A stretch of DNA of 64,000 nt, from the IMG/VR virus record IMGVR_UViG_3300035698_029839, positions 186,001 to 250,000 of that record; one strand, 5' to 3'. Under the pieces are notes generated by a model. It was given only the letters and a program-made list of their open reading frames with translations, was not told the DNA's origin and searched no databases. The translations under genes were made by a program, and so were the position numbers. Below are positions 6,102-63,479 of the stretch, one piece after another; positions within the stretch are counted from its first letter, which is position 1; each line of letters starts with the position of its first letter.

Positions 6102-6956
6102 ATGACAACTAATATATATTTACAAAGTGATTTTCAAGAATCTTATGATAAGTATCTTCATGATCCTATGGGTAAAATCAGATGGAAAAGACTTTCTCGC
6201 GGAGGAAGAAATAGAAGAGAGATATTTAAATTATTAGAAAATTATGTAGGTGCTGTGGGAGGAAGGATAGATCATGTGGTTCCTCATGGAATAGTAAGGG
6301 ATTTATATGATAGGTATCGAGATGAAAGGATAATAGATGGTAAGGTTGAACGGAATTATAGATGGAAAGAACTTGGACTTCAACATTGTTTTAGAGATTT
6401 GGTTATTTATATAGATGAAATGGCACATAGGGGAGAAGGGAAAATAGCAGAAAATGTAGAAGGGGCACTTATTGAATATCCCGATCATTATGCTTCTGTT
6501 TTACTATCTGATAATAGAAATATTTATCCAACTTCAATATCTTATAGAGATTTGTATATCGGAGATCAAATATTTAGATTAAAATATCAATCTCTTACTG
6601 ATGGATGGAGATCTAATTGTGGGTATGTTAATATAATTTATGAAAATAGATCTCATTTATATGAGAATCAATTTACTCCTGCTTTTACAAAAAAAGAAGG
6701 GATACATATAATATCTCCTATTTTTGCTTTTGATTATATCGAAGTGAATGTAGAAAGAAGTCAATATCCTGATGGTATTCCAGAAAGATTTTATGTAGAT
6801 TTTAATGAAGCTCCTGGAATACCTGAAGAAGTAGTAGTTTGTAAACTTGGTCATGAGAGATACGGAGAGTTAATTTCATTCTATGATCTTATTTCAGAAA
6901 AAGAAATTTCCGAAATAATAGAAAAAACTTTGAAAAGTGAAAAGATATTGTTATAA
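6102..6956 (+). CDS. divergent ATP-grasp (RimK-like) protein
   Basis: HRGEGK, WRSN, FAFDY and DFNEAPG in RimK-like order. Confidence 0.45.
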   Translation: MTTNIYLQSDFQESYDKYLHDPMGKIRWKRLSRGGRNRREIFKLLENYVGAVGGRIDHVVPHGIVRDLYDRYRDERIIDGKVERNYRWKELGLQHCFRDLVIYIDEMAHRGEGKIAENVEGALIEYPDHYASVLLSDNRNIYPTSISYRDLYIGDQIFRLKYQSLTDGWRSNCGYVNIIYENRSHLYENQFTPAFTKKEGIHIISPIFAFDYIEVNVERSQYPDGIPERFYVDFNEAPGIPEEVVVCKLGHERYGELISFYDLISEKEISEIIEKTLKSEKILL

Positions 6957-8563
6957 TGGGAATATGGTTAACAAAAAAACAATATACTAGGTATATTAAT
7001 TTTACTACGGATACAGGTAAGGAATTAGCAGATATGAATAATACCCCAGTTAAATCACCAGTGAGACACAATAATAATTTAAGTACGGCTATACAATCAG
7101 AAGTTGTAAGAAAAACAGAATTTTTGGATGATGAATATCCTTTCGGTGATTGTGAGGAGGCTCAGGTGGAAGGTGGAGCGGCTGAAACAATGAATTTAGA
7201 AGAAAAAAACAAGCAAATAGAAGAGAACTTAGCGAAAGTTAAATTTGCAGATCAAATTAAGATAGATTTTATACCCTCTATTGATTATAGAATATTGTGT
7301 AGATTTCTAGGTGTTACTACTGTAAATGACATAAAGAACCATCCCTTTCAGTCCCATCCACTTATTACTTTGATATTAATGGAGAGTCTTAATGGGTTTA
7401 TGGAACAAGAAGGATATGAAATGGTTGGAGAATTAAATTTTGACAATCATGGTAATTCTGTACCTCCTGATAAGAATCCATGGAACGTAAGGGGCAAAGA
7501 AACCACCTTTACTATAACTGGTTTTTTATTCTTTGAAAAAATAAAAGGAGAGAAGAAGGACAATGTCTCATTCTTTTTATTCTCAGATCTTGAAAGAGGT
7601 GGAGCTTCTATTACTTGTTATAGCACAGATACTAACAAATCTAAAGATATTGTTAATGATTTGCAAATATATTCCAAAAAGAACAATTGTTTAAGAGGAG
7701 CGAAACTTAAAGATGTAAACATGATTACTGCTTCTTTTTCTGAGGTAGATCTTAGAGCAGAAGATTCAAGACCAGAGTATACTTGGGACAATTATTACTA
7801 TTCTGATGAAATTAAAGATTTATTTCAATTAGAGGTTTTTGATTTTGTTGAAAATGTAAAAAAATATAACGAATGTAATATTTATAAAAGAGGGATCATT
7901 TTGCATGGTAGGCCAGGGTGTGGAAAAACCACAATCGGTAATATCCTCTGTAATATGACCCCTAACAATACGGTAATATGGATAACTCCTGAAATTTTAT
8001 CAGAGAACAATTATAAAGCTATGTCTTCGATAAAAGCTCTTTATAAATTAGCTGATTTTCTTTCGCCATGTATCATTATGCTTGAAGATTTAGATTTGTT
8101 TAGTCAGGACAGGGAAAGAGGTGGAGATGTTATTTCTCTTGGGGCGCTGATGAATATTCTTGATGGTGTTAATACTATTTCTAATTCTGTCACTATTGGC
8201 ACTACAAATAGATTGGGATCTATTGAAACAGCATTAAGAAATAGACCTGGCCGATTTGATAGAATAATAGAGATAGAATCTCTTTCAAAAGATCTTAGGA
8301 CCAAGATGTTTAAAGAAAGATTAAAAGAATGGAAAGTTTCTAAAAACACTTTAGATTATGTTGCTGATAAAACCGACGAATGGACAGGTGCAGAAGTACA
8401 AGAGTTTATTAATAGTCTTAATCTCAAACACATTAGTAGTAAAAGAAAAATCAAAAAGATGAGTCAGTCATGGGCAGAAGAGATTATAGGCACTTTGAGT
8501 AATTTCGGTGTCGGAGGATCTAGTTCTGGTTTCGGCTTCGGTGGAAAAATTAAAAATGATTGA
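6956..8563 (+). CDS. AAA+ ATPase
   Basis: Walker A GRPGCGKT, Walker B IIMLEDLD, sensor TTN, second region of homology ALRNRPGRFDR. Confidence 0.93.
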   Translation: MGIWLTKKQYTRYINFTTDTGKELADMNNTPVKSPVRHNNNLSTAIQSEVVRKTEFLDDEYPFGDCEEAQVEGGAAETMNLEEKNKQIEENLAKVKFADQIKIDFIPSIDYRILCRFLGVTTVNDIKNHPFQSHPLITLILMESLNGFMEQEGYEMVGELNFDNHGNSVPPDKNPWNVRGKETTFTITGFLFFEKIKGEKKDNVSFFLFSDLERGGASITCYSTDTNKSKDIVNDLQIYSKKNNCLRGAKLKDVNMITASFSEVDLRAEDSRPEYTWDNYYYSDEIKDLFQLEVFDFVENVKKYNECNIYKRGIILHGRPGCGKTTIGNILCNMTPNNTVIWITPEILSENNYKAMSSIKALYKLADFLSPCIIMLEDLDLFSQDRERGGDVISLGALMNILDGVNTISNSVTIGTTNRLGSIETALRNRPGRFDRIIEIESLSKDLRTKMFKERLKEWKVSKNTLDYVADKTDEWTGAEVQEFINSLNLKHISSKRKIKKMSQSWAEEIIGTLSNFGVGGSSSGFGFGGKIKND

Positions 8564-9012: not shown

Positions 9013-10740
9013 ATGGCTAAGTATGCAAATCATGTAGCAAATCCAAAGACTCCTCAAAATGAGAGAGCAAAGAGCACCCAAGTAAAAGGTAAGGCAGGTG
9101 GTTTTGTCTTTAAAGTTGATGACTGGACAAGACTTAATCGTTTCTTAATCATTGGTAGTGAAAATGGTTCTTACTACGCTTCAGAGCGTAAGTCAACTAT
9201 GGAAAACTATAATTGCATTTTGAGATGTTTGAAACTTGATGCCAAGAAAACTGTGGATACTATTGTAGAGATTAGTGATAAGGGTCGTGCGGTAAAGAAC
9301 GATCCTGCTATTTTTGCTCTGGCAGTATGTAGTGTTCACGGAGATGAAAAGACTAAGGCACATGCTAATAGTGTTATGCCTAAAGTTGCTCGTTTCTCTA
9401 CTGCTTTTTTTACGTGGATTGATGCGGTCAATACATTGAAGGAAGGTCGTAAGGGTAAGGGTCTGTTGAGGGCTATAGGAAGATGGTACACAGAGAAAGA
9501 CCCTGTAAGGCTAGCTTATCAAATTTGCAAATATCCAGGTCGTTCAGTAGGTGGTCAAAGATGGACTCATGCTGATGCTCTTCGTATGGCAAGAATTTCT
9601 CCATCTAGGGACGGCAAGCCTTCTAAAAATGGTAAGGCTTTAACTATTCCTACTGATGATCATGCAGTTGTATTCCATTATGCAACACATGGGATTACAA
9701 CTGCTAAAGTTTTGAAGGCAAGGCAGGCAGAGGAAAAAGTTACTGGCAAGAAACAAGAAGCTCCTGGTATCTCGGAAGAGCAGTATGAAGCTTTGAAAGA
9801 TAGTAAGCTTAAGTATATCTGGGCACATGAGCAATGTAAGATTGCTATGAAGAACAGTGAAGTAGTTTCTTTGATTAGTGATTACAATCTTACTAGAGAG
9901 TCTATTCCTCCTCAATTCAGAAATGAATTAGAGATACAGAAAGCATTATTGCCAGGTATGCCAATGACAGCATTGATTCGTAACTTGGGTAGTATGACCT
10001 CTTCGGGTCTTCTAAAACCTTTGAGTGATGAGACTTCAGCAGTAATTGATAAAATTACAAATGATGAAATTCTGAAGAGGAGTCGTATTCATCCTATGAC
10101 AATTATGCTAGCCCTTAAAACTTATAGTAGCGGTGCTGGTATGAGGACTACATGGAAACCAGTATCATCAATTAAAGATGCTATGGAAGATGCTTTTTAC
10201 AAAGCTTTTAACTATGTTGAGCCAACTGGAAAGAAATTTTTGTTTGGTGTTGATGTTAGTGGTTCTATGGGTTGGGGTGATACTGCTGTTATGAGTCCTC
10301 GTGAGGCAGCGGCAGTGGTGGCTATGACGTGTGCTAGAACAGAGAAGAACTATGATATAATGGGTTTTTCTCACACATTCTCTAAGCTTAATATCACTGC
10401 TAAGGATAGTTTAGATACTGTAATTAGAAGGACTTCTAATTTAAACTTTGGTGGAACTGATTGCGCACTTCCTATGATGTATGCAATTAAAAATGAATTG
10501 GATGTAGATGTATTTGTTGTCTTAACAGACAATGAAACTTGGTGTGGTGGTATTCATCCATTTGAAGCATTGAAACAGTATCGTAAGAAATTTAATAAAA
10601 ATGCAAAGCTTGCAGTGTTGGCTTTTGATAGTAATGAATTTACTATTGCTGATCCAAGTGATGCAGGTATGATGGATATCGCTGGTTTGGATTCTAACGT
10701 ACCTAAAGTGTTAGCAGAATTTGCAGCAGGTAGACTTTAA
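9013..10740 (+). CDS. rsr: Ro60/TROVE-domain RNA-binding protein (Rsr-like) with C-terminal vWA domain
   Basis: AGGFVF...RLNRFLIIGS...YY, MPMTALIRNLG, RIHP, MIDAS DVSGSM, GGTDCALPM, TDNETW, IADPSDAGMMDIAGLD. Confidence 0.95.
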   Translation: MAKYANHVANPKTPQNERAKSTQVKGKAGGFVFKVDDWTRLNRFLIIGSENGSYYASERKSTMENYNCILRCLKLDAKKTVDTIVEISDKGRAVKNDPAIFALAVCSVHGDEKTKAHANSVMPKVARFSTAFFTWIDAVNTLKEGRKGKGLLRAIGRWYTEKDPVRLAYQICKYPGRSVGGQRWTHADALRMARISPSRDGKPSKNGKALTIPTDDHAVVFHYATHGITTAKVLKARQAEEKVTGKKQEAPGISEEQYEALKDSKLKYIWAHEQCKIAMKNSEVVSLISDYNLTRESIPPQFRNELEIQKALLPGMPMTALIRNLGSMTSSGLLKPLSDETSAVIDKITNDEILKRSRIHPMTIMLALKTYSSGAGMRTTWKPVSSIKDAMEDAFYKAFNYVEPTGKKFLFGVDVSGSMGWGDTAVMSPREAAAVVAMTCARTEKNYDIMGFSHTFSKLNITAKDSLDTVIRRTSNLNFGGTDCALPMMYAIKNELDVDVFVVLTDNETWCGGIHPFEALKQYRKKFNKNAKLAVLAFDSNEFTIADPSDAGMMDIAGLDSNVPKVLAEFAAGRL

Positions 10741-10751
10741 TCTTAAAACAT

Positions 10752-10785
10752 AAGGCAATGGAGAGTAAATCCCATTGCCTTTTTT
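10752..10785 (+). terminator. intrinsic terminator after Ro60
   Basis: AAGGCAATGG/CCATTGCCTT stem plus T-tract. Confidence 0.8.
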
Positions 10786-10839
10786 GCTCTTTATAAATTA
10801 GTAGTGTCAAGGAAGATTATTTAATAAAGGAGATGCACC

Positions 10840-11421
10840 ATGTCCCTATGGGATCAGAATAAGATGTTATACATTTTACACAGAAACGGAGTTAGCAGAA
10901 AGAATATTTTATTTATAATGAATGATTTAAAAACTTCTGAAACTTTTGGTACAGAAAATGATTTTGAAGATGAATTTGAAGATGATTGGGAGCTTGTAGA
11001 ACAAAAAGCATTTTTGTTATTTGAAAGCAATGTATCAAGTAAAGCAAAAATACTTGCTTTGAGAAACATAAAGAAAAAAGAAGAAGAATTTGAAAATACA
11101 AGGAAATGTCAGTACCTTACGGATCAAGAGGGAAGGATTCAGACAAAACGTAAAGAGCTTATAGAACAAGGGGTTATAGAACCTGATAAACTAACTCATC
11201 AAAAAACTCTTAAACTTACTACAAGATATGGTAGGTCTCCTTTACATGAAGCAATTGCTATGAGAGATATTCGTTTAGTAGAAAAATATCTTAAAAGTGA
11301 AAAATATCTTGACAAAGTAGATAATAACGGTCATACTGCTATGGAGATGGCATATTATGAGAATTATACTGATGCCTTAGCTCTATTTAAAAAGTACACA
11401 TTGACCAAAAAAGTTGGTTAA
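10840..11421 (+). CDS. ankyrin-repeat protein
   Basis: GRSPLHEA and DNNGHTAMEMA ankyrin motifs. Confidence 0.8.
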   Translation: MSLWDQNKMLYILHRNGVSRKNILFIMNDLKTSETFGTENDFEDEFEDDWELVEQKAFLLFESNVSSKAKILALRNIKKKEEEFENTRKCQYLTDQEGRIQTKRKELIEQGVIEPDKLTHQKTLKLTTRYGRSPLHEAIAMRDIRLVEKYLKSEKYLDKVDNNGHTAMEMAYYENYTDALALFKKYTLTKKVG

Positions 11422-11427
11422 TTTGAA

Positions 11428-11453
11428 AATTCCAGACAAGTGGTTTTTTAAAA
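11428..11453 (+). repeat. dispersed intergenic motif AATTCCAGACAAGTGGTTTTTTAAAA (first copy)
   Basis: Exact 26-mer also at 19277, 35545, 36884 and 41917; variants at about 38617, 56238, 56331, 57565 and 57976. Confidence 0.9.
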
Positions 11454-11498
11454 TACTAACGTAGAAATGAATAAATATTTTTTTTACGGAAAGGTTTT

Positions 11499-11945
11499 AT
11501 GATGAAAGTAAAAGTTGGAACAAATGAGTATTTGATGCATTGGGAGAAGCGTAAATTCAATCCTCTTACTGGCAAAAATACGGATAAAGAATTGGAATCC
11601 ACTGATTGTATTATCAGCAGATTGAATTCTGATGGAACGACAGCGGTGATTGCACGAGGCCATGTAAGTCAAACTTCTTGTGATCCGTCAAACGGTGTTA
11701 TGGCAAGAAGGTTGTCTTTTATTAAGGCAATCAAAGGTATGGATAGACTAGCACGTAAGGCATTAGGCGATGAGTACAATAGAACTTGTCGCGTTGTGCC
11801 GAGAACTCTTGGTCAGAAGAATCGCAAGTTAAGAAATCGTATCCTTGCTCTTCAAAAAGCATTAGCTATGGCTAATAGCATGATCAGTGGTGGAGAATCT
11901 CATACAGAAAAATCTGAGAAAGTAATAAAATCAGTAATGATTTAA
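11499..11945 (+). CDS. hypothetical phage protein
   Basis: 148-aa ORF downstream of the TTCCAGACAA motif, with GAAAGG RBS. Confidence 0.7.
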   Translation: MMKVKVGTNEYLMHWEKRKFNPLTGKNTDKELESTDCIISRLNSDGTTAVIARGHVSQTSCDPSNGVMARRLSFIKAIKGMDRLARKALGDEYNRTCRVVPRTLGQKNRKLRNRILALQKALAMANSMISGGESHTEKSEKVIKSVMI

Positions 11946-12022
11946 GAAGAGGAAAATTTCTCTTATTCTGGAACATATATCTTACAGATATATTGCAGAT
12001 ATATTACAATTGAATAGTCAGC

Positions 12023-12055
12023 AGGGATGTGAGTTTGTGTTTACATCCCTTTTTT
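12023..12055 (+). terminator. intrinsic terminator
   Basis: AGGGATGTGA/TTACATCCCT stem plus T-tract. Confidence 0.75.
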
Positions 12056-12131
12056 ATTTTAAAAGAGGAACTAGCTACTCCTTTATCGAATATAATAAAT
12101 AAAGGTTTATTATATAGAAGGGGAGTATAAA

Positions 12132-13028
12132 ATGAAAAAATGGACACCAAAAGAAGATAGTTTTTTAGAAAATAATGTTGGATCTTTAACATATAAACAG
12201 ATGGCGGACAATCTAAAAAGAACAAGAATGTCTGTGATGAAGCATTGTCAATGGAGAGGATTATCTAACTCTATACTGAGTGAAAAAACTCGATTTAAGA
12301 AAATATATAAAGTTAATGATAATTTTTTTAGTAACTATAATATTTTATCTTGTTACTACGCTGGATTGATAGCTTCTGATGGAAGCATTCATAAAAAAAG
12401 TAATGCGATATCAATAACTCAAGCTAAAAGTAGATTATCTTGTTTAGAAAAATTTAAGAAAGATGCTGGTTATAATGGAGTTATATATGGCCCTACAAAA
12501 ACAATAGGACAAGATGCTTACGCTCTGGTTATTAGTAGTAAAAAATGGAAAAAAGATTTAAAAAATAATTTTATGATTACACCTAATAAATCTTTAACAC
12601 TTTTACCTCCTGATTTAACTGATAAAAAAATGATAATTAGTTTTATAAATGGTTTGATTGATGGGGATGGGTCTGTTGGAGCTTATAATTATAAGAATAA
12701 AAAAGATATCGTTCCTATAATTACTTTTTGCGGAACAAAAAGTATAGTCGAGTGGGTTGCTAATAATTTAAATAAATATTTTATAATTAAAAATAGGACA
12801 ATACGTTATAGGCAGATAATTTCTAACAATACTTATTTTTTAAGTTTCAGTGGATGTAGGGTTATAAAATTTTATCAGTATCTTGTAAAAAATGATATCC
12901 CCTTTATGCGTTGTAAATGGAGCAGAATGGTAGATAAGTTATTTGTAAAAGGGCTGGATTACTATTTAAAAAACAAAAGAAAGACTAATAAGAGGGATAA
13001 TAATGGAAGATTTTGTAAAATTAGTTAA
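12132..13028 (+). CDS. free-standing LAGLIDADG homing endonuclease with N-terminal HTH
   Basis: YYAGLIASDGS and FINGLIDGDGS motifs; WTPKED HTH-like N-terminus. Confidence 0.9.
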   Translation: MKKWTPKEDSFLENNVGSLTYKQMADNLKRTRMSVMKHCQWRGLSNSILSEKTRFKKIYKVNDNFFSNYNILSCYYAGLIASDGSIHKKSNAISITQAKSRLSCLEKFKKDAGYNGVIYGPTKTIGQDAYALVISSKKWKKDLKNNFMITPNKSLTLLPPDLTDKKMIISFINGLIDGDGSVGAYNYKNKKDIVPIITFCGTKSIVEWVANNLNKYFIIKNRTIRYRQIISNNTYFLSFSGCRVIKFYQYLVKNDIPFMRCKWSRMVDKLFVKGLDYYLKNKRKTNKRDNNGRFCKIS

Positions 13029-14211
13029 AGAATTAAGTATAGAACATCCTGCAAGAGTCATAGAATTCTCTGACTTAACTAAGGGATTGTTCGCAGAAGT
13101 GGCAAAGGGTAATATTAATGTAGGTTATCACCCAGAGTTTCCACATCTTGCTATATTTAAATACTCTCTAGGTTGTGTTATGGAAAGAAACTGGAATAAA
13201 TTTACTATTATGGCTAGAGGTCTAATATTAGACCTTAAAAATAAAAGTGTTATCGCTACTCCGTTCATAAAATTTTGGAATTATGATGAGATTTTTTCTG
13301 CTATATCTATTCTTGAGCCAGAGTTTACTATTACAGAGAAGATGGATGGCTCACTAGGTATAATGTTCTTCTATGCAGATAAGTTTAGATTTGCAACAGC
13401 AGGTTCATTTATATCTGAACAAGCTCAATGGGCAGAACAATGGATGTACAACAAGATGCCTTTGGATAAAATAGATAAGACTAATACTTATTTGTTTGAG
13501 ATAATTTATCCAGAGAATAAGATTGTGGTTACTTATGATTTTGAAGGACTAGTTTTGCTTGGTATCTTTGATACTTATGGTTTAGAATATAACTATGAGC
13601 AATTAAAGTGGGAAGCTTCATATATGGGAACATCTTGTACTCCACAACATGATTTCGCAGATATGGACAGCATACTTAATAATGCTAAGACTTTAGATAG
13701 CAACAATGAAGGATATGTAATACGGTTCAAGAACGGGATACGTTTGAAGATTAAGGGCGATGAATATGTTCGTATACATAGATTAATATCAAGAGTAACA
13801 CCTCTTGCTATCTGGGAATCTATCATAAACGGAGATGACTTAACAGAAGTAAAGGAAGAATTACCAGAAGAGATGGAAAAAGACTTTGATGCTATAACTG
13901 CAATTCTTTACGAGAAGTTAGAAATCTTTGTAAAAGAAGTAGAAGCTCTGCATTCTGAAACTAAGTTAATGTCGGATAAAGCATTGGGTCTTTATATACA
14001 AAGAAATCCCGAAGGTTGGGGAGATAGAACATTTAAAAGATCTTTGAGATATATTTTTCCTATGAGAAAAAATAAGTTCTATGAATCTCTTAAAGAAAAA
14101 GGATCGTTAGGTCGTAAGAAGATTTTTAATGAGTTTAGACCTACATCTAATAGATTAGAAGGTTATACACCATCATCAGCAGTTAATAGATTTGCCGATA
14201 TGGACACCTAA
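13003..14211 (+). CDS. RNA ligase, T4 Rnl1-like
   Basis: ARGLI, PFIKFWN, adenylation motif EKMDGS, FEII, EGYV, LKIKGDEY. Confidence 0.9.
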   Translation: MEDFVKLVKELSIEHPARVIEFSDLTKGLFAEVAKGNINVGYHPEFPHLAIFKYSLGCVMERNWNKFTIMARGLILDLKNKSVIATPFIKFWNYDEIFSAISILEPEFTITEKMDGSLGIMFFYADKFRFATAGSFISEQAQWAEQWMYNKMPLDKIDKTNTYLFEIIYPENKIVVTYDFEGLVLLGIFDTYGLEYNYEQLKWEASYMGTSCTPQHDFADMDSILNNAKTLDSNNEGYVIRFKNGIRLKIKGDEYVRIHRLISRVTPLAIWESIINGDDLTEVKEELPEEMEKDFDAITAILYEKLEIFVKEVEALHSETKLMSDKALGLYIQRNPEGWGDRTFKRSLRYIFPMRKNKFYESLKEKGSLGRKKIFNEFRPTSNRLEGYTPSSAVNRFADMDT

Positions 14212-14826
14212 ATCACTTTTCACTTTTCAAAAAAACAATTTGTAAGTGAAAGTGATTTAGGTTATAATTAAGGCAGTAATGTTAACTACTACTGAAGGCG
14301 TGCAAATGAAAAGTGAATATGGGTGTTATGTTTTAATGTTGTCGTATGTTGATGAGAACTGGATGGATATAGGCGGTAATATTTATCCACCAGAAGGTTT
14401 TGTAGAAGCTAAAAATTTTACAAGAGATATTGATGTCAGATTTGGATTGAATGGGATTTTATGGGGAAAAACTTGTTATTTTCCATATGAGCAAATTAAC
14501 AAAGGGAATTGGACGGTTGTAAAAACAGAATTGATTGACGATTTGATTAAAACAGAACATTATTATAATCGTTATAAATTTCCAAATGGATGGATAGTTT
14601 ATTCTGGTAGTTTAAGAGACTCTGCTAAATATATAGTAAGACATAAAAATGATGACAGTTTTTCCGAAGATGGAAAATGGATTCAAGCAGAAGAAATAGC
14701 TGGATCTCGTCAATGGATGAAAGATCATAATTTAGAGTAGGAATAAATGGTGCTAAAGCATTTTGTATTTTTTTATATTTTCTATTTAAATATTTTTAAT
14801 AAATAAAAATTATAGAAAGAAGGTGT

Positions 14827-15516
14827 ATTATATATTTTATTGGTGACGTTCATGAAGAATTCAAAACCTATGAATATATTGTTTTGAAAATGCAACACAA
14901 AGGAGGTAGAAAAGGTATGGAATTTTCTCTTCAAGTTGGAGATATGGGTATTGGATTTCCTGATTATGGAGATTATTCTAAAGATGGTAAAAGTTGGTCT
15001 CCTATAATGCCTTCTGATCATATGTTTTTTAATGGCAATCATGATAATCCTTTATTATGTAAAACTCATCCTAACTATTTAGGAGATTGGGGGTATATCC
15101 CTGATCCAAATATGTTTTATGTTTCTGGCGGTTTTTCTATAGATCATGCTTATAGATTTGTTGATATGACTTGGTGGAAAGATGAAGAATTGAATAATGA
15201 AGAAATGTCTAAAGCTTTAGATTCTTATAAAATTAATAAACCAAAAATAGTGGTATCTCATGAATGTCCATTAGGAGTTAAAATAGATTTTGTTACTAAT
15301 TCATGGAAGTTTGATGTCAACAGTAGAACAGAGGAATTACTACAAAGTATGTTTGAAATACATCAACCTGACTACTGGATTTTTGGACATCATCATCAAA
15401 GAAAAGAGTTGGATAAAAATGGAACTCATTTTGTGTGTTTAGATGAGTTGATAGGTGGTAAAATAAATGATTGTATTTATGAAATAAAAGGTTTAACTTG
15501 GGAAGGATATAAATAA
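14827..15516 (+). CDS. calcineurin-like metallophosphoesterase (probable non-AUG start)
   Basis: In-frame IYFIGDVH lies upstream of the called start; also QVGDMG, GNHDN, VSHECP, FGHHH. Confidence 0.85.
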   Translation: MIYFIGDVHEEFKTYEYIVLKMQHKGGRKGMEFSLQVGDMGIGFPDYGDYSKDGKSWSPIMPSDHMFFNGNHDNPLLCKTHPNYLGDWGYIPDPNMFYVSGGFSIDHAYRFVDMTWWKDEELNNEEMSKALDSYKINKPKIVVSHECPLGVKIDFVTNSWKFDVNSRTEELLQSMFEIHQPDYWIFGHHHQRKELDKNGTHFVCLDELIGGKINDCIYEIKGLTWEGYK

Positions 15517-15827
15517 TGCCGTATATACTACAAGAACAAAGAGATAGATTAGATCCTATGATAGAACATCTTTCAAAAGATTTGTTAGAGCATCTTGATG
15601 TAGGAGAGTATAATTATGTAATGACTAAGCTTATGCATGAATTTATATTGAAGAAGGGTATAAAATATAAAAACTTCAGTGCCGCTAAAGCAGTGTTGAT
15701 GGATGCTAGAGATGAACTTAGTAGAATTCCAATGGGATTTTATGAAGATGAAAAAATAAGAGCCAATGGTTTTATTAGTGAATTAGATTTACACTCGCGT
15801 AGGAGCAAGGGAGATTCGACAATATGA
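15516..15827 (+). CDS. conserved phage protein (DUF6899-like)
   Basis: MPYI...GEYNY...YEDEKIRANG pattern. Confidence 0.55.
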   Translation: MPYILQEQRDRLDPMIEHLSKDLLEHLDVGEYNYVMTKLMHEFILKKGIKYKNFSAAKAVLMDARDELSRIPMGFYEDEKIRANGFISELDLHSRRSKGDSTI

Positions 15828-16606
15828 TTGGAGCTATAATAGGCGATGTAGTAGGTTCTCCTTATGAAGGGAGAAGAATGAATTTCTTCGATTATGATTT
15901 TCCTCTCTTCAACGAAAGATCTACGTTTACAGATGATACTATTTTAACTGTTGCTACTGCCAAGGCCATACTTGAGGATATTCCTTATGGAACAGCGTAT
16001 CTTGAGCTAGGTAGAAAATATAGACGTAAGGGTTATGGTAGTGCTTTTGAAGAGTGGTTATGTTCTCCTGACCCTCAACCGTATGGTAGCTGGGGCAATG
16101 GCTCGGCTATGAGAATTAGCCCTATCGGTCTTTATTTTGATACTCCATCAAAGGTTGGTATAGAGGCTGCGAAGAGTTCTAAAATAACTCATAATCATCT
16201 TGATGCTATACAGGGTGCATCAGCTATTGCCTTAGCTATTCATTATGCTAAATGTGAGGGCAATAAGGAACAGATTAAAGATATTGTAAAAGCTATGTAT
16301 AATTATGAGTTTGAAAAGGATTGGGAATTTTATAGAAATAATTATAAATTTGATATTACCTGTAAGGGCACTGTTATTCAGGCATTAACCGTTTTCTTTG
16401 AATCAAATAGTTTTGAAGATTGCATAAGGAAATCTGTGTTAATGGGAGGAGATACAGATACATTAGCTTGTATAGCGGGTTCTGTAGCGGAAGCATATTA
16501 TAAAGATATACCTGAAGATATAGCAACAGAAGCTTTAGGCAAAATTCCTGATGAGTTTTTAACTATTGTAAGAGAATTTTACAAAACGATGAGAACAAGT
16601 ATATGA
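15824..16606 (+). CDS. ADP-ribosylglycohydrolase (DraG/ARH family)
   Basis: GAIIGDVVGS, FTDDT, SWGNGSAMR, ITHNH, GGDTDT. Confidence 0.93.
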   Translation: MIGAIIGDVVGSPYEGRRMNFFDYDFPLFNERSTFTDDTILTVATAKAILEDIPYGTAYLELGRKYRRKGYGSAFEEWLCSPDPQPYGSWGNGSAMRISPIGLYFDTPSKVGIEAAKSSKITHNHLDAIQGASAIALAIHYAKCEGNKEQIKDIVKAMYNYEFEKDWEFYRNNYKFDITCKGTVIQALTVFFESNSFEDCIRKSVLMGGDTDTLACIAGSVAEAYYKDIPEDIATEALGKIPDEFLTIVREFYKTMRTSI

Positions 16607-17262
16607 TTAAGATAGCAGCAATATCTGATATGCATGGTCAACTATCTTTCAAAGTCCCAGAAGTAGATTTGCTTTTGATAGCGGGAGATTTGTGCCCCGC
16701 TCGTCATGAACCATATCTTTGTGTTGATTTTCAATCTAATTGGTTAAATCTCGATTTTAGATATTGGTTATCAGATCAACCGATTAAAGAGTGTGTAGCA
16801 GTAGCAGGAAATCATGATTGGATATGGGAAAAAGCTAAAGATCAAGTTCCTAAAATGAATGCTAATTTCCATTATATAGAAGATGAATCAATAGAGATTC
16901 TTGGTCAAAAAATATATGGAACTCCAGTACAGTTACCTTTTAATAATTGGGCTTTTAATAAAGATGAAAAATCGATTCAAAAACATTGGGACAATATCCC
17001 TGAAGGCCTAGATATACTTCTTCTTCATAGTCCTCCGTATGGATTTTTAGATAGAACTAATCCTCTTAATTATGAATCAGAAAGAATTGGGAGTAAAAGT
17101 CTTACAAAGAGAATAGAAGAAGTTTGTCCAAAACTTGTTGTATTTGGTCACAATCATGAATCTCATGGCACTTTTGAAGAAAATGGGATCACTTACATCA
17201 ATGCTTCTCTAGTTGATGAGAGATATAAAATGACAAGAGAACCTATTGTGGTGGAATTATGA
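16603..17262 (+). CDS. calcineurin-like metallophosphoesterase
   Basis: ISDMHG, IAGD, AGNHD, HSPP, FGHNHE. Confidence 0.92.
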   Translation: MIKIAAISDMHGQLSFKVPEVDLLLIAGDLCPARHEPYLCVDFQSNWLNLDFRYWLSDQPIKECVAVAGNHDWIWEKAKDQVPKMNANFHYIEDESIEILGQKIYGTPVQLPFNNWAFNKDEKSIQKHWDNIPEGLDILLLHSPPYGFLDRTNPLNYESERIGSKSLTKRIEEVCPKLVVFGHNHESHGTFEENGITYINASLVDERYKMTREPIVVEL

Positions 17263-60008: not shown

Positions 60009-60081
60009 TGTCCTTTAGTGTAATGGCTTAGCACGATTGCCTTTGACGCAATCAGTCGAAGTTCGAATCTTCGGAGGACAG
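60009..60081 (+). tRNA. tRNA-Gln(UUG)
   Basis: Cloverleaf; anticodon loop CT-TTG-AC; T loop TTCGAAT. Confidence 0.9.
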
Positions 60082-60178
60082 CTATGAATAGGATAATGTA
60101 TAAAAATAAAAAAAGGAGTATTCCCCTATTATCAGAATATATATAATATAAAGTACATTTTAATAATAGGAGATTGTA

Positions 60179-60892
60179 ATGAAACAAAAAACAGGGCCTA
60201 AAAGGACTAGTATTATATGGCAGATGTCAAAAAAAGATTTTACAGAAAATGTGAAAAAAAGTTCTACTTTTAAAGAGATATTAAAATATTTTGGATTAGA
60301 AAATAAAGGTAGCAATTACAAAACATTAAAAAAAAGATTAGAGGAAGAAAATATAAATTATTCTCATATTCCTACAGGAGTAGGATGTAACAAAGGAATG
60401 AAAATAAATAGAAAAGCTATCTCATTAGAAAAAGTAATGATAGAAAATTCTACTTATTGCAGGGGGACTCTTAAAAAAAGATTATTAAAGAATGGTATGT
60501 TAGAAAATAAATGTATGATCTGTGATCAACTACCTGAACATAATGGGATTAAATTAGTAATGGTTTTAGATCATATTAATGGAACTCCTAATGATCATAG
60601 ATTAGAAAATTTAAGATTACTTTGTCCTAATTGCAATAGCCAACAATCAACTTTTGCTGGAAAAAGGCATAAAAAACATTATTATTGTGAAAAATGTGGG
60701 AATAAAAGAAAAAATAAACAAAGTAAATATTGTTTTAGTTGTTCTGTTAAATTAAATGGGCAAAATAGAAGAAAAGTTAAAAATAGACCATCTAAAGAAA
60801 AATTATTAAAAGAAATAAAAGAAACTAATTATTGTGCTGTTGGTAGAAAATATGATGTAAGTGATAGTGCTATTAGAAAATGGTTGAAATGA
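60179..60892 (+). CDS. HNH endonuclease in tRNA array (paralog 1)
   Basis: CMIC...LDHING..NDHRLENLRLLCPNCNSQ; C-terminal HTH. Confidence 0.9.
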   Translation: MKQKTGPKRTSIIWQMSKKDFTENVKKSSTFKEILKYFGLENKGSNYKTLKKRLEEENINYSHIPTGVGCNKGMKINRKAISLEKVMIENSTYCRGTLKKRLLKNGMLENKCMICDQLPEHNGIKLVMVLDHINGTPNDHRLENLRLLCPNCNSQQSTFAGKRHKKHYYCEKCGNKRKNKQSKYCFSCSVKLNGQNRRKVKNRPSKEKLLKEIKETNYCAVGRKYDVSDSAIRKWLK

Positions 60893-60895
60893 TAT

Positions 60896-60969
60896 TCCCA
60901 TGTAACTCAATTAGGCAGAGTGGCACGCTGTTAACGTGTTGGTTGTAGGTTCGATTCCTACCGTGGGAG
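60896..60969 (+). tRNA. tRNA-Asn(GUU)
   Basis: Cloverleaf; loop CT-GTT-AA. Confidence 0.9.
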
Positions 60970-61081
60970 TTCGATTCTTTGAAAAGTAAATAGGGGTTCC
61001 AAAAGGAACACACATTGTGTTAAGTTTTAATTACTAACACATGGAGAGGTATAGCACTGAGTGGTATCTCTCCATGTTTTC

Positions 61082-61155
61082 TGACCTATAGCTTATGTGG
61101 GAAAAGCATTCGTCTTATAAGCGAAAGAGTCCAGGTTCGAATCCTGGTGGGTCAA
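61082..61155 (+). tRNA. tRNA-Ile(UAU)
   Basis: Cloverleaf; loop CT-TAT-AA; A73. Confidence 0.88.
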
Positions 61156-61158
61156 TAT

Positions 61159-61231
61159 AGGCATAAAGCTCAGCAGGCAGAGCATCGTGCTGATATCACG
61201 AAGGCCGTTGGTTCGAATCCAGCTATGCCTA
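61159..61231 (+). tRNA. tRNA-Ile(GAU)
   Basis: Cloverleaf; loop CT-GAT-AT. Confidence 0.9.
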
Positions 61232-61299
61232 TTAGAAAGAGGAATTCTTCTTTTTTTCCCGAAATAATATAGAATAAAGGACAAAAGGGAGAATTCATC

Positions 61300-61518
61300 A
61301 TGAAAGAAGTCTTGATAGAATTAGTAAAAAGGGTAAGTAGGAAAGCAGTTATATTAGCAATAGCTATGGTGTTGGTATATATGGTTATTATAACACCGAA
61401 TGCCGTAAATGCAGTGATAGCTATAGGGGTGATTTCTGGTTTATCAATAGTAGGAGCAGGACTTCAATTTTATTTAGATCTTAAAAAGATCAAAGATGAC
61501 GAAACAGATAAAATTTAA
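61300..61518 (+). CDS. small two-helix membrane protein (holin-like)
   Basis: SRK followed by two hydrophobic segments and a charged tail. Confidence 0.5.
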   Translation: MKEVLIELVKRVSRKAVILAIAMVLVYMVIITPNAVNAVIAIGVISGLSIVGAGLQFYLDLKKIKDDETDKI

Positions 61519-61659
61519 GCAGGTTGAATGTGAGTAAGTTATCGCTTATGGAGCCTGATGTGGATGGTTCGATTCCTCCTCTCTCGATTACAAATTGTTC
61601 GAGAGATAGCTTAACGGTAGAGCGCAGTAAAAACACTTATTCCTCCCACATATCTGCTT
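61517..61659 (+). ncRNA. YrlA-like Y RNA with permuted tRNA-like domain (Y1)
   Basis: Terminal stem AAGCAGGT/ATCTGCTT; T arm GGATGGTTCGATTCCTCC, then closed acceptor-like stem TCTCTCGA/TCGAGAGA, then D arm AGCTTAACGGTAGAGC; Ro60 gene in the same window. Confidence 0.8.
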
Positions 61660-61669
61660 TTTTAAACTT

Positions 61670-61763
61670 AGAAATATGGTGATAGGGCCTACAAAGCTTG
61701 GGTCAGCCAACTACCCTAGGGACGCAAGTCATTGGTCTGGGGTCGAGTCCCAGTCATATTTCT
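61670..61763 (+). ncRNA. aberrant tRNA-like RNA without a canonical anticodon loop
   Basis: Acceptor-like AGAAATATGG/TCATATTTCT, T arm CTGGG-GTCGAGT-CCCAG, enlarged branched anticodon arm. Confidence 0.5.
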
Positions 61764-61770
61764 CTTTTTT

Positions 61771-61844
61771 ACCCGCTTCGCTTAGTTGGCTAAAGCATCT
61801 GTCCTACAAACAGAAGATCGTAGGTTCGAGTCCTATCGCGGGTA
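61771..61844 (+). tRNA. tRNA-Val(UAC)
   Basis: Cloverleaf; loop CC-TAC-AA (C33). Confidence 0.85.
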
Positions 61845-61846
61845 TT

Positions 61847-61970
61847 ACACAGGTTGATCGCATGAAGGTTATCGGATAAAACATTTTTTCTTCAAACAAA
61901 AAATGCAAGTAGGGTTCAAACCCTTACAACCCAGAAATGGGAAAATTCTTCTGCACTAACATATCTGTGT
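61847..61970 (+). ncRNA. Y-RNA-like ncRNA (Y2)
   Basis: ACACAGGTTGA...GGTTATCG at 5' end and ACATATCTGTGT at 3' end; internal hairpin plus T-arm-like GTAGGG-TTCAAAC-CCTTAC. Confidence 0.7.
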
Positions 61971-61973
61971 TTT

Positions 61974-62044
61974 CCCCTATTGGTGTAATGGGAGCACGTG
62001 GCACTGTCGATGCCAGGGCAGCAGATCGAAACTGCTATGGGGGG
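61974..62044 (+). tRNA. tRNA-Asp(GUC)
   Basis: Cloverleaf; loop CT-GTC-GA; G73; T loop ATCGAAA. Confidence 0.85.
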
Positions 62045-62049
62045 TTTTT

Positions 62050-62131
62050 GAGAGTATTGAGCAATTGGTGGCTTATCTGGCTGTAACCCAGATTCTGAAA
62101 AGACTTGTAGGTTCGAATCCTTCTGCTCTCA
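62050..62131 (+). tRNA. tRNA-Tyr(GUA)
   Basis: Cloverleaf with long variable arm; loop CT-GTA-AC. Confidence 0.9.
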
Positions 62132-62134
62132 TTT

Positions 62135-62251
62135 GGAGTTACTATGAATAAGAATTCTAGAAACTTATTTTAGTACTTTAGTCGTCTAAGGGCAAGGATA
62201 CCTGTGCAAGCAGGAGATATGGTGTTCGAGTCGTCATCTAAATATTACTCC
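62135..62251 (+). ncRNA. degenerate tRNA-like element in a larger closing stem
   Basis: GGAGT/ACTCC closure; D-arm-like GTCTAAGGGCAAGGAT, short CCTG-TGCAAG-CAGG arm, TTCGAGT T loop. Confidence 0.45.
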
Positions 62252-62256
62252 TAAAT

Positions 62257-62347
62257 GGTAAGTTGGCAGAGTCTGGCTTATTGCACTTGGTTGCTAACCA
62301 AGAGGGCCTTGAATAAGGTCCCATAGGTTCAAATCCTATACTTACCG
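62257..62347 (+). tRNA. tRNA-Ser(GCU)
   Basis: Cloverleaf with long variable arm; loop TT-GCT-AA; G73. Confidence 0.92.
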
Positions 62348-62429
62348 TTAGTGTGGAAAGCCGCACACGTAGTTACTTCCTTTTCGAAGGAGCAGACTAG
62401 GCTTGACGAAGGGGAAGAGACTCCTAACT

Positions 62430-62516: not shown

Positions 62517-62522
62517 CTTATT

Positions 62523-62595: not shown

Positions 62596-62603
62596 TTTAT
62601 CAA

Positions 62604-63477: not shown

Positions 63478-63479
63478 AA

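What the first reader, a model, noticed from the sequence alone, without database searches (positions are those of the whole stretch)
9013..17262. Clustered RNA repair and de-ADP-ribosylation toolkit
Seen: Ro60, an ankyrin protein, an Rnl1-like ligase, two metallophosphoesterases and an ADP-ribosylglycohydrolase within 8 kb. Established: T4 Rnl1 with Pnk heals PrrC-cut tRNA, Ro60 co-occurs with RNA repair genes, and ARH enzymes reverse ADP-ribosylation. Inference: the protein arm of a tRNA-protection system whose RNA arm (tRNAs, Y RNAs, attenuator) sits at 59.5-64 kb. The phosphoesterases may heal 2',3'-cyclic phosphate ends. No 5' kinase is visible in this window.
Basis: partly seen in the sequence, partly recalled or inferred. 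Interest (0 to 1): 0.62.

Follow-up and report, generated by a model that had tools for sequence, protein, structure and literature searches.

The report
Phage Ro60, Y-RNA and RNA-ligase cluster
A huge salt-lake phage keeps an RNA-binding Ro60 protein, an RNA ligase, two phosphoesterases and an ADP-ribose-removing enzyme side by side, and encodes several Ro60 partner RNAs among its tRNA genes. This is a new variant of the known phage RNA-repair toolkits, and only part of it can be tied to RNA repair.

Summary
Window 9013-17262 encodes Ro60 (TROVE plus vWA with a MIDAS motif), a two-repeat ankyrin protein, an Rnl1-family ligase with intact catalytic motifs, two calcineurin-type metallophosphoesterases and an ADP-ribosylglycohydrolase. 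The block is syntenic in about 10 related phage contigs. Ro60, the ankyrin protein, the DUF7666-like protein and the second phosphoesterase are always there. The ligase is in 8 of 10, the glycohydrolase in 7 of 10, and the first phosphoesterase with DUF6899 in about 6. The RNA arm is real: a YrlA-type Y RNA lies at 61517-61665, with 19 of 30 base pairs showing compensatory changes across 10 copies. There are at least four further copies in and just beyond the window. No polynucleotide kinase lies in the 297-kb contig. Two relatives carry a T4-type Pnk at a syntenic slot that is empty here. Outside this clade, homologues of these genes do not cluster. A Ro60/Y-RNA plus Rnl1 RNA-repair core is well supported. 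End-healing by the phosphoesterases, and any RNA role for the glycohydrolase, remain inference.

The parts
6956..8563 (+). AAA+ ATPase (535 aa; classic AAA module at residues 314-441, N-terminal 300 aa unknown). It lies directly upstream of Ro60 in 7 of the 9 relative contigs that cover this position.
   Evidence: Pfam AAA 4.7e-20; CDC48/PAN/FtsH-type NCBIfam hits below cut-off; synteny
9013..10740 (+). Ro60 (Rsr-like) RNA-binding protein: TROVE ring plus vWA domain with MIDAS motif DVSGS
   Evidence: a promoter-like TTGACT-16-TATAAT at 8921-8948 (the scan as a whole is not enriched over shuffles)
10840..11421 (+). Protein with two C-terminal ankyrin repeats; always the gene after Ro60
   Evidence: Pfam Ank_2 E 1e-4, below cut-off; orthologue profile against PDB hits 249 ankyrin chains, best 3.5e-22
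11499..11945 (+). Unknown 148-aa phage-specific protein, present in only some relatives; followed by a terminator-like hairpin at 12023-12050
12132..13028 (+). Free-standing LAGLIDADG homing endonuclease with an N-terminal HTH-like part. Its 3' end overlaps the ligase start by 26 nt. It is absent at this site in all relatives.
   Evidence: PF14528 1.5e-7, phrog_4645 5.9e-23; synteny
13003..14211 (+). Rnl1-family ATP-dependent RNA ligase. Motif I lysine (KMDGS), motif III Glu, motif IV EG and motif V KxK all align with T4 Rnl1.
   Evidence: PF09511 5.3e-15, phrog_562 1.4e-54, TIGR02308 1e-18 (below the equivalog cut-off), 2c5u E 8.5e-13 with alignment
14306..14740 (+). 144-aa DUF7666-like protein of unknown function. 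It is present in every relative, always just upstream of the phosphoesterase genes (separated from them only by the ADP-ribosylglycohydrolase gene or a homing-endonuclease insertion in some), and after the ligase when that is present.
14827..15516 (+). Metallophosphoesterase 1 (all five calcineurin-type motifs), with a non-canonical ATT or ATA start after a Shine-Dalgarno-like GAAAGAAGG
   Evidence: (PF00149 1.4e-7 with the extended N-terminus)
15516..15827 (+). DUF6899 protein. Its start codon overlaps the stop of phosphoesterase 1, and it follows that gene wherever that gene is present.
   Evidence: PF21840 1e-16
15824..16606 (+). ADP-ribosylglycohydrolase (ARH/DraG fold) with both acidic metal-binding motifs (TDDT, GGDTDT); overlaps its neighbours by 4 nt
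   Evidence: PF03747 6.2e-34, phrog_6572 5.8e-51, PDB MJ1187/ARH3/DraG hits
16603..17262 (+). Metallophosphoesterase 2, MPPED2-like (class III phosphodiesterase type); present in all relatives
   Evidence: PF00149 1.6e-11; 3rl4 E 1.7e-27 over residues 80-219; synteny
61517..61665 (+). YrlA-type Y RNA: closing stem with an invariant GGUUG/CAUAUC core, then V region, T-arm, acceptor-like hairpin and D-arm, ending in a U run
61845..61973 (+). Second Y-RNA-like gene: same closing stem, different internal module
   Evidence: model R1, 32.3 bits, E about 1e-4
63824..63909 (+). Third, minimal Y-RNA-like gene (closing stem and a small loop only)
   Evidence: model R1, 30.9 bits, E about 1e-4 to 1e-3
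60009..63673 (+). Array of 13 tRNA genes that hosts the Y RNAs, interrupted by two HNH-like ORFs (60179-60892 and 62788-63477)

Best explanation
The region is a lineage-specific gene block of a clade of very large salt-lake phages. It has two layers.

Core, well supported: a Ro60 ribonucleoprotein and an Rnl1-family ligase form an RNA surveillance and repair unit. The Ro60 ring, with its vWA domain, is partnered by a small family of YrlA-type, tRNA-mimicking Y RNAs encoded in the phage's tRNA array. Its job is most likely to keep tRNAs, both the phage's own and the host's, usable when host anticodon nucleases or stress damage them. In this picture Ro60 with Y RNA captures or presents damaged structured RNA, and the ligase reseals 5'-phosphate/3'-hydroxyl breaks.

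Periphery, inferred: a translationally coupled sub-operon of phosphoesterase 1, DUF6899, ADP-ribosylglycohydrolase and phosphoesterase 2 is preceded by a DUF7666-like protein. It plausibly supplies end-cleaning activities, namely opening or removing 2',3'-cyclic or 3'-phosphates and removing ADP-ribose adducts. These genes are gained and lost among relatives and may equally act on their own.

The 5'-kinase step is not encoded in the 297 kb at hand. In two relatives a T4-type Pnk supplies it. In this phage it must come from the unsampled 38% of the genome or from the host, or the ligase works only on breaks that already carry a 5'-phosphate.
For: Shown:
- The domain assignments and intact catalytic or metal-binding motifs of Ro60, the ligase, both phosphoesterases and the glycohydrolase.
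- The Y-RNA family. A seed alignment of 4 copies gives 14 of 30 pairs with compensatory changes. The covariance model finds copies not in the seed, at 80 and 60 bits just beyond the window end and at 32 and 31 bits inside the window. Over 10 copies, 93.7% of cells pair against 76% in shuffles and 44-60% in slid controls, and 19 of 30 pairs are compensatory with 0 of 500 shuffles as high.
- The Y-RNA architecture (stem, V, T, acceptor-like, D) is that described for YrlA (PMC4201824).
- The block recurs in about 10 relatives at 36-84% protein identity, including a distant one with a different upstream gene.
- The five genes 14827-17918 have start and stop codons that overlap by 1-4 nt.
- The ligase's nearest GenBank phage homologue lies 0.75 kb from a polynucleotide kinase among tRNA genes. 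Two clade members carry a kinase plus 3'-phosphatase Pnk.

Established knowledge:
- T4 Rnl1 with Pnk repairs PrrC-cut tRNA.
- Salmonella rsr-yrlBA-rtcBA is an RNA-repair operon induced by damaged tRNA (PMC7790460).
- Jumbo phages were already noted to combine Rnl1/Rnl2, Pnk-HAD, phosphoesterases and, rarely, TROVE proteins (PMC7824862).
Against: - No activity was tested.
- Clustering is conserved only within a clade whose whole neighbourhood is syntenic, so it does not show selection for linkage.
- The ligase is absent in 2 of 10 relatives that keep Ro60, the DUF7666-like protein and phosphoesterase 2. The glycohydrolase is absent in 3 of 10 and phosphoesterase 1 in about 4 of 10.
- The association of the glycohydrolase with the ligase (7/1/0/2) gives Fisher p = 0.07 without any correction for relatedness.
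- Homologues of the glycohydrolase and of phosphoesterase 2 in other phages are not near each other or near RNA-repair genes.
- Ro60 in other phages has no ligase neighbour.
- The only studied phage Ro60, from Thermus phage phiLo, co-opts host PNPase rather than a ligase (PMC12135203).
- No kinase, RtcB, KptA or Macro domain was found in this contig.
Confidence: 0.5

Rival explanations
1. The block is a mosaic accessory or counter-defence island. The genes are neighbours because this part of the genome collects auxiliary genes, and each acts alone. Ro60 with Y RNA re-tunes host PNPase and RNA turnover. The ligase works with a Pnk encoded elsewhere. Phosphoesterase 2 is a class III phosphodiesterase that destroys cyclic-nucleotide or cyclic-oligonucleotide defence signals. 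The glycohydrolase erases ADP-ribose placed on phage DNA, RNA or proteins by host ADP-ribosyltransferase defence toxins, or degrades ADP-ribose-derived signals.
For: - Content varies among relatives, and homing endonucleases are inserted at different points.
- Phosphoesterase 2 is closest to MPPED2, whose family hydrolyses cAMP/cGMP and other phosphodiesters (PMC10547211).
- The nearest glycohydrolase homologues are single genes in small Bacteroides and Porphyromonas phages. In the 735-kb phage LR756501 the glycohydrolase and phosphoesterase-2 homologues lie 77 kb apart.
- Phage-borne ADP-ribose erasers, though of the unrelated NADAR fold, are proven counter-defences against DarT (PMC11825919).
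- A phage Ro60 attenuates host PNPase (PMC12135203).
- The surrounding genes are DNA methylases, helicases and unknowns.
Against: - The order Ro60, ankyrin protein, ligase, DUF7666-like protein, phosphoesterase persists down to about 36-45% identity, and next to a different upstream gene.
- The five downstream genes are translationally coupled.
- The glycohydrolase was seen only in contigs that also have the ligase (7 of 8, against 0 of 2).
- No cyclic-nucleotide or ADP-ribose target is identified.
Confidence: 0.35
2. The block encodes an NAD-linked RNA-end repair pathway. The DUF7666-like protein is a very divergent ADP-ribosyltransferase-fold enzyme, either Tpt1/KptA-like or an RNA-end ADP-ribosylating enzyme. 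The glycohydrolase and phosphoesterases process the resulting ADP-ribose or cyclic-phosphate products, so that the Rnl1-type ligase can complete a fungal/plant-style healing-and-sealing reaction without a T4-type Pnk.
For: - In the Foldseek-independent structure search, more than 35 of the 50 best chains are ADP-ribosyltransferase-fold proteins: TreX, TreTu, Arr, PARPs, DarT1, ParT, and diphtheria, pertussis and cholix toxins.
- The gene always sits between the ligase and the phosphoesterase/glycohydrolase genes.
- No canonical KptA exists in the clade.
- Iyer et al. describe KptA-based clean-up in jumbo phages.
Against: - All Z scores are 5.3 or lower, within the tool's stated noise range.
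- Only one of five AF2 models was confident, and Foldseek against the PDB found nothing.
- The clear relatives are DUF7666 proteins of unknown function.
- No conserved His or Arg sits in the place of an H-Y-E, R-S-E or KptA catalytic set.
- The protein is kept in relatives that lack both the ligase and the glycohydrolase.
Confidence: 0.07

Closest known systems
T4 Rnl1 + Pnk tRNA anticodon-loop repair (counter to PrrC)
   Same: The ligase is of the Rnl1 family, and all nucleotidyl-transferase motifs align with T4 Rnl1. The phage has many tRNAs. Two clade members have a bifunctional kinase/HAD-phosphatase Pnk.
   Different: No Pnk lies in this contig, and its syntenic slot is empty (window 49438-49772). 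The ligase scores far below the T4 RnlA equivalog cut-off (67.6 against 242 bits). Sequence similarity ends at about residue 281, before the tRNA-specifying C-terminal domain. Ro60, the phosphoesterases and the glycohydrolase have no T4 counterpart at this locus.
Bacterial rsr-yrlBA-rtcBA RNA-repair operon (Salmonella) and the Ro60/Y RNA/PNPase RYPER complex (Deinococcus); Ro60 of Thermus phage phiLo
   Same: There is a Ro60 with a vWA/MIDAS domain, plus YrlA-type tRNA-like Y RNAs, in several copies per genome. Ro60 is genetically linked to an RNA ligase.
   Different: The ligase is ATP-dependent Rnl1, not RtcB. There is no RtcA or RtcR. The Y RNAs lie about 50 kb from Ro60, inside the tRNA array, rather than next to it. 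The Rfam YrlA model scores only 20 bits. Conserved partners here are an ankyrin protein and an AAA+ ATPase.
Jumbo-phage RNA-repair repertoires catalogued by Iyer et al. 2021 (PMC7824862)
   Same: The general kit is the same: ATP-grasp RNA ligases, phosphoesterases for end clearing, occasional TROVE proteins and large tRNA sets.
   Different: That survey names 2H, cRec and HAD enzymes for end clearing, and Macro/NADAR for ADP-ribose products. Here the candidates are two calcineurin-type phosphoesterases and an ARH-fold hydrolase, arranged in one block with DUF7666-like and DUF6899 proteins.
Clostridium thermocellum Pnkp (metallophosphoesterase healing domain) and class III phosphodiesterases (Rv0805, MPPED1/2)
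   Same: They share the calcineurin-type binuclear metallophosphoesterase fold. From my own knowledge, enzymes of this fold can hydrolyse 2',3'-cyclic phosphates. Phosphoesterase 2 matches MPPED2 at E 1.7e-27.
   Different: There is no fused kinase or ligase domain. Neither PDB sequence search listed a Pnkp phosphatase domain among its matches, and no direct comparison with Pnkp was made. The substrate is unknown.

Membership tests
Ro60 / TROVE (Rsr) | TROVE ring domain followed by a vWA domain with a MIDAS motif | tested here: met
   PF05731 1.8e-30, PF25045 1.9e-61; DVSGS at residues 414-418. NF041674 Rsr scores 418 bits, below its equivalog cut-off of 900.
Ro60 / TROVE (Rsr) | A partner Y RNA encoded in the same genome | tested here: met
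   A covarying YrlA-type RNA family, with at least 3 copies in the window and 2 just beyond it. Physical binding is not testable here.
YrlA Y RNA (Rfam RF02553) | Reaches the Rfam gathering score | tested here: not met
   20.4 bits against 69, E 0.98
YrlA Y RNA (Rfam RF02553) | A long closing stem plus a tRNA-like module in the order V, T-arm, acceptor-like stem, D-arm | tested here: met
   RNAalifold consensus and pair counts, compared with the description in PMC4201824
Rnl1 (T4 RnlA) RNA ligases | Covalent nucleotidyl-transferase motifs I (Lys), III (Glu), IV (EG) and V (KxK) | tested here: met
   Residue-by-residue alignment to 2c5u. T4 Lys119 is replaced by Ala, and the significance of this is unknown.
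Rnl1 (T4 RnlA) RNA ligases | The Rnl1-specific C-terminal helical domain that confers tRNA specificity | tested here: inconclusive
   Sequence similarity to T4 Rnl1 ends at about residue 281 of 402. The protein was not folded.
Rnl1 (T4 RnlA) RNA ligases | NCBIfam equivalog score | tested here: not met
   TIGR02308 67.6 bits against a cut-off of 242. The protein is a family member, not an equivalog.
T4-type healing-and-sealing system (Rnl1 + Pnk) | A 5'-kinase/3'-phosphatase encoded by the same phage | tested here: not met
   The 297-kb contig has no AAA_33/PNK3P protein and no homologue of the relatives' Pnk. The syntenic slot is empty. The contig is only about 62% of the genome.
Calcineurin-like metallophosphoesterases | Motifs GDxH, GD, GNH(D/E), H and GHxH | tested here: met
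   All are readable in both proteins. Scores are PF00149 1.4e-7 and 1.6e-11.
RNA 2',3'-cyclic phosphodiesterase / 3'-phosphatase (end healing) | Activity on RNA 3' ends | not testable with these tools
   The only evidence is fold-level precedent and gene position.
ADP-ribosylglycohydrolase (ARH/DraG, PF03747) | Domain above the gathering score, with both acidic metal-binding motifs | tested here: met
   118 bits against 26; TDDT and GGDTDT motifs. The DraG and Tri1 equivalog cut-offs are not reached, and the substrate class is unknown.
Ankyrin repeat proteins | Ankyrin repeat consensus | tested here: met
   A single sequence falls below the Pfam cut-off. The orthologue profile hits 249 ankyrin chains, best 3.5e-22, over two repeats.
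DUF7666 (PF24703) | Match to the family | tested here: inconclusive
   There is no direct Pfam hit at E <= 0.1. Distant profile hits do carry DUF7666 above its cut-off. Structure TM is 0.72-0.73, and the BFVD E-value is 3e-8.
ADP-ribosyltransferase fold (for the DUF7666-like protein) | Significant structural match and a catalytic residue set | tested here: not met
   Z <= 5.3, and no conserved catalytic triad or tetrad. This is kept only as a lead.

The most novel reading that the evidence does not exclude
The DUF7666-like protein, phosphoesterase 1 with DUF6899, the ARH-fold hydrolase and phosphoesterase 2 together form a previously undescribed RNA-end healing route that feeds an Rnl1-type ligase without a T4-type Pnk. 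It might do this by removing ADP-ribose caps or 2'/3'-phosphate products from damaged tRNA ends, with Ro60 and its tRNA-like Y RNAs acting as the platform that holds the broken RNA.
Probability: 0.1. Interest if true: 0.8.

Novelty: new variant of a known kind. Interest (0 to 1): 0.45.

Why it matters
Phage Ro60 proteins are common, but their role is barely known. The only biochemical study links one to host PNPase. This clade places Ro60 next to an RNA ligase and gives it at least five tRNA-like Y RNAs embedded in a tRNA array. That makes the idea of Ro60 as a repair platform directly testable with a small set of recombinant parts. The clade also offers natural variants for comparison: with and without Pnk, ligase, glycohydrolase and phosphoesterase 1. 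It puts an ARH-fold ADP-ribose hydrolase and two phage-type metallophosphoesterases on the list of candidate RNA-end or counter-defence enzymes. It also gives the DUF7666 and DUF6899 families a reproducible genomic context.

Tried and rejected
- Megablast of the region against GenBank phages found no match.
- The Rfam gathering scan found no Y RNA. A permissive scan of 8400-17400 found nothing next to Ro60.
- The two large gaps in the tRNA array are HNH-like ORFs, not RNA genes.
- Searches of the contig for AAA_33, RtcB, KptA, Macro and ART-PolyVal all came back negative.
- A screen of all P-loop ORFs gave only AAA+, helicase, RecA, clamp-loader, an AAA_28 (NadR-type) kinase and a CoaE fusion. 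None is a polynucleotide kinase.
- The AF2 model of phosphoesterase 1 was too poor to search (pLDDT 55). Its PDB profile search gave only a 46-residue Dbr1 match. The two phosphoesterases are not close paralogues (E 0.03).
- For the DUF7666-like protein, Foldseek against the PDB was empty. The ADP-ribosyltransferase-fold enrichment at Z <= 5.3 was not accepted as a fold assignment.
- The DUF6899 word search returned only close relatives. The unknown 148-aa protein has only phage hypotheticals as neighbours in the ESM Atlas.
- No paper mentions DUF7666, DUF6899 or DUF4774.
- The second RNA ligase has no PDB sequence match.
- The sequencing-run search found only DNA runs from salt-lake metagenomes. 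Read laying was therefore not used, and no expression evidence exists.

Full report
**Source and setting.** The window is bases 186001-250000 of a 297,710-bp IMG/VR virus record, judged about 62% complete. GC content is about 31%, and nearly all genes lie on the + strand. Near-identical DNA is found only in salt-lake metagenomes, with no RNA runs. Megablast against GenBank phages finds nothing. The best phage Ro60 relatives are 36-39% identical.

**Observation.** ORF listing and Pfam/PHROG scans give this gene order on the + strand:

| Coordinates | Product |
|---|---|
| 9013-10740 | Ro60 |
| 10840-11421 | ankyrin protein |
| 11499-11945 | unknown, 148 aa |
| 12132-13028 | LAGLIDADG homing endonuclease |
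| 13003-14211 | Rnl1-family ligase |
| 14306-14740 | unknown, 144 aa |
| ~14827-15516 | metallophosphoesterase 1 |
| 15516-15827 | DUF6899 protein |
| 15824-16606 | ADP-ribosylglycohydrolase |
| 16603-17262 | metallophosphoesterase 2 |

- Ro60 has the TROVE and Ro60-type vWA domains and a MIDAS motif.
- The ankyrin call is weak for the single sequence, but a profile of nine orthologues hits 249 ankyrin chains in the PDB.
- The ligase aligns with T4 Rnl1 through motif I (Lys), III, IV and V.
- The glycohydrolase keeps both acidic metal-binding motifs and matches MJ1187, ARH3 and DraG structures.
- Phosphoesterase 2 matches MPPED2 at E 1.7e-27.
- Phosphoesterase 1 is listed by the ORF tool from a TTG at 14884. 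Its GDVH motif lies in frame upstream, where the frame is open from 14803 without any ATG, GTG or TTG. The same holds in three of five orthologues, which begin at ATT or ATC after a Shine-Dalgarno-like sequence. Two orthologues have ATG.
- The five genes from 14827 to 17918 have start and stop codons that overlap by 1-4 nt, so they are probably co-translated.

**Relatives.** Pattern scans and exact-protein look-ups recovered the block in these sources:
- four IMG/VR records: G001 (548 kb, complete), G002 (351 kb), G003 and G004;
- six further metagenome contigs: L030, L032, L033, L035, L057 and L058.

Protein identities to the window run from 84% down to about 36%.
- Ro60, the ankyrin protein, the 144-aa protein and phosphoesterase 2 are present wherever the contig covers their position. 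One Ro60 is truncated to 277 aa.
- The AAA+ ATPase upstream of Ro60 is present in 7 of the 9 relatives that cover its position.
- The ligase is present in 8 of 10. It is absent in G004 and L030.
- The glycohydrolase is present in 7 of 10. It is absent in G001, G004 and L030, and absent from the whole of the complete G001 genome.
- Phosphoesterase 1 with DUF6899 is present in about 6.
- The homing endonuclease is unique to the window at this site. Relatives carry other endonuclease genes at other points.

The glycohydrolase was seen only where the ligase is present. With these numbers, Fisher p = 0.07, uncorrected for relatedness. Flanking genes of unrelated function (Q_salvage, methylases, unknowns) are syntenic too, so conserved order alone does not prove functional coupling.

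**Outside the clade.**
- Ro60 of Sinorhizobium phage Phosso lies among tail genes. In LinStu and Karp it lies in or near tRNA arrays. None has a ligase, phosphoesterase or glycohydrolase nearby.
- The ligase's closest GenBank phage homologue, in Streptomyces phage Yaboi, lies 0.75 kb from a polynucleotide kinase among tRNA and tmRNA genes. This is the classical pairing.
- The closest homologues of the glycohydrolase and of phosphoesterase 2 are in Bacteroidota phages and in huge uncultured phages. There they stand alone or lie 77 kb apart.

**Kinase.**
- The contig has no AAA_33 or PNK3P protein.
- A screen of all Walker-A ORFs found no polynucleotide kinase.
- G002 and G003 each encode a kinase plus HAD-phosphatase protein of T4 Pnk architecture. 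These genes have no homologue in this contig.
- In G002 the gene lies between two genes whose window orthologues are separated by only 334 bp (window 49438-49772). The gene is therefore absent at that site here.
- G001 has only a 177-aa AAA_33 kinase, next to an ART-PolyVal gene.
- The contig also lacks RtcB, KptA and Macro.
- Outside the window, the contig does have a second RNA_ligase-family gene (genome 163766-164785) and an AAA_28 kinase.

**RNA arm.** ARAGORN finds 13 tRNAs at 60009-63673. Rfam at gathering threshold finds no Y RNA. A permissive scan gives a 20-bit YrlA hit at 61555-61629.

This stretch is conserved in G002 and G001. It folds as a long closing stem that encloses a T-arm, a hairpin and a D-arm. 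Four copies from three phages give a consensus of 30 pairs, 14 of them with compensatory changes.

A covariance model built on them finds further copies that were not in the seed:
- genome 251247-251392 (80 bits) and 251563-251686 (60 bits), just past the window end;
- window 61845-61973 (32 bits);
- window 63824-63909 (31 bits, stem only);
- more copies in G001 and G002.

Over ten copies, 93.7% of cells pair. This compares with 76% after shuffling and 44-60% when partners are slid. Nineteen of 30 pairs have double changes, and 0 of 500 shuffles do as well. The alignment was fitted to the model, which favours it somewhat.

The order stem, V, T, acceptor-like, D is the YrlA architecture of Chen et al. 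(PMC4201824). The inner five pairs of the closing stem never vary, and they are the likely Ro60 site. The large gaps at 60179-60892 and 62788-63477 are HNH-like ORFs.

**The unknowns.**
- The 144-aa protein has only close relatives by word search. A profile search of 1.84 billion representatives gives 238 hits. Distant hits carry Pfam DUF7666, often together with DUF4774.
- Its AF2 model has pLDDT 88 for one of five models. It matches DUF7666 clusters at TM 0.72-0.73 and a BFVD DUF7666 protein at E 3e-8.
- Foldseek against the PDB finds nothing. The wide VIA search gives only Z <= 5.3. More than 35 of its 50 rows are ADP-ribosyltransferase-fold proteins. I keep this as a lead, not a result.
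- Small members of this family keep the position next to a phosphoesterase even in distant contigs. A 285-aa member sits in an unrelated context.
- DUF6899 and the 148-aa protein remain uninformative.
- The phosphoesterase-1 model was too poor to use.

**Interpretation.** The well-supported part is a Ro60/Y-RNA particle genetically tied to an intact Rnl1-type ligase, in a phage with a large tRNA set. That matches the known logic of RNA repair in T4, in the Salmonella rsr-rtcBA operon (PMC7790460), and in the jumbo-phage survey of Iyer et al., which already lists Rnl1/Rnl2, Pnk-HAD, phosphoesterases and occasional TROVE proteins (PMC7824862).

The phosphoesterase and glycohydrolase sub-operon is physically and translationally linked, but it varies among relatives. 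Its members resemble enzymes that act on small phosphodiesters and on ADP-ribose adducts generally. Its members could clean RNA ends. They could equally be independent counter-defence enzymes against cyclic-nucleotide signalling or ADP-ribosylating toxins. Phage ADP-ribose erasers of another fold are proven counter-defences (PMC11825919). The only studied phage Ro60 modulates host PNPase (PMC12135203).

I put about 0.5 on the repair module with an accessory healing layer, 0.35 on the mosaic island, and under 0.1 on an NAD-linked pathway involving the DUF7666-like protein.

**Novelty.** Each component family and the general idea are known. The particular block appears undescribed. It comprises an AAA+ ATPase, Ro60, the ankyrin protein, Rnl1, the DUF7666-like protein, a phosphoesterase, DUF6899, the ARH enzyme and a second phosphoesterase, with a multi-copy Y-RNA family in the tRNA array. 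This genome also lacks Pnk at the site where relatives carry it. I rate it a new variant of a known kind, of moderate interest.

**Limits.** There are no activity or expression data. The contig is incomplete. The relatives are few and not independent.

Noticed in passing
window 14803-14886; L012:12727-12802, L032:7722-7776, L035:11336-11447: The catalytic GDxH motif of metallophosphoesterase 1 lies upstream of the first ATG/GTG/TTG. In 4 of 6 orthologues the gene can start only at ATT or ATC (ATT or ATA in the window), 3-6 nt after a Shine-Dalgarno-like sequence. Two orthologues use ATG. This looks like a conserved non-canonical, probably weak, start codon.
   Followed up: partly
window 12132-13028: A LAGLIDADG homing endonuclease with an HTH-like N-terminus is inserted just upstream of the ligase and overlaps its first 26 nt. 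It is absent at this site in all relatives, which carry other endonuclease genes elsewhere in the block (for example L012:11807-12649 and 15061-15891 on the minus strand).
   Followed up: partly
window 49438-49772: This is the syntenic slot where relative G002 has a T4-type polynucleotide kinase-phosphatase (L025:10270-11283). Only 334 bp lie between the flanking orthologues here, so the gene was lost here or gained there.
   Followed up: yes
window 60179-60892 and 62788-63477: Two HNH-like ORFs sit inside the tRNA array. The DNA of the second is 77% and 69% identical to two separate places in G001, so it is a mobile element spreading within these genomes.
   Followed up: partly
window 61670-61765: A 94-nt element lies between the Y RNA and tRNA-Val. 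It has a 10-bp closing stem, a T-arm-like hairpin (GGGGTCGAGTCCC) and a U run. ARAGORN does not call it as a tRNA, even allowing introns, and it is absent at this spot in G002. It could be a degenerate tRNA or another tRNA-like small RNA.
   Followed up: partly
window 4415-5380: A queuosine-salvage (Q_salvage, PF10343) gene is conserved a few genes upstream of Ro60 in all relatives that cover its position. The phage encodes tRNAs of the queuosine family (Asn-GTT, Asp-GTC, Tyr-GTA). A possible link to tRNA modification was not examined.
   Followed up: no
window 6956-8563; genome 20782-22440: A classic-clade AAA+ ATPase with an unknown 300-aa N-terminus is the conserved upstream neighbour of Ro60 (a vWA protein). 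A paralogue elsewhere in the genome carries a GGACT-like N-terminal domain.
   Followed up: no
genome 163766-164785, 173159-173713, 289800-290936 (outside the window; L005, L008): There is a second RNA_ligase-family (PF09414) protein of 339 aa, with the transferase domain in its C-terminal half and no PDB sequence match. There is also an AAA_28 (NadR-type) small kinase and a cytidylyltransferase-like/dephospho-CoA-kinase fusion.
   Followed up: partly
window 59481-59790: A 310-nt stretch upstream of the first tRNA is 80% identical to G002 and holds a sub-threshold SpF36 sRNA hit at 59751-59801 (34 bits against 48). It was not analysed.
   Followed up: no
L016:886-1962 (G001): The complete 548-kb relative lacks the glycohydrolase. 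It has an ART-PolyVal ADP-ribosyltransferase gene directly followed by a 177-aa AAA_33 kinase, plus two Macro-domain genes elsewhere. ADP-ribose chemistry is thus handled differently across the clade.
   Followed up: partly
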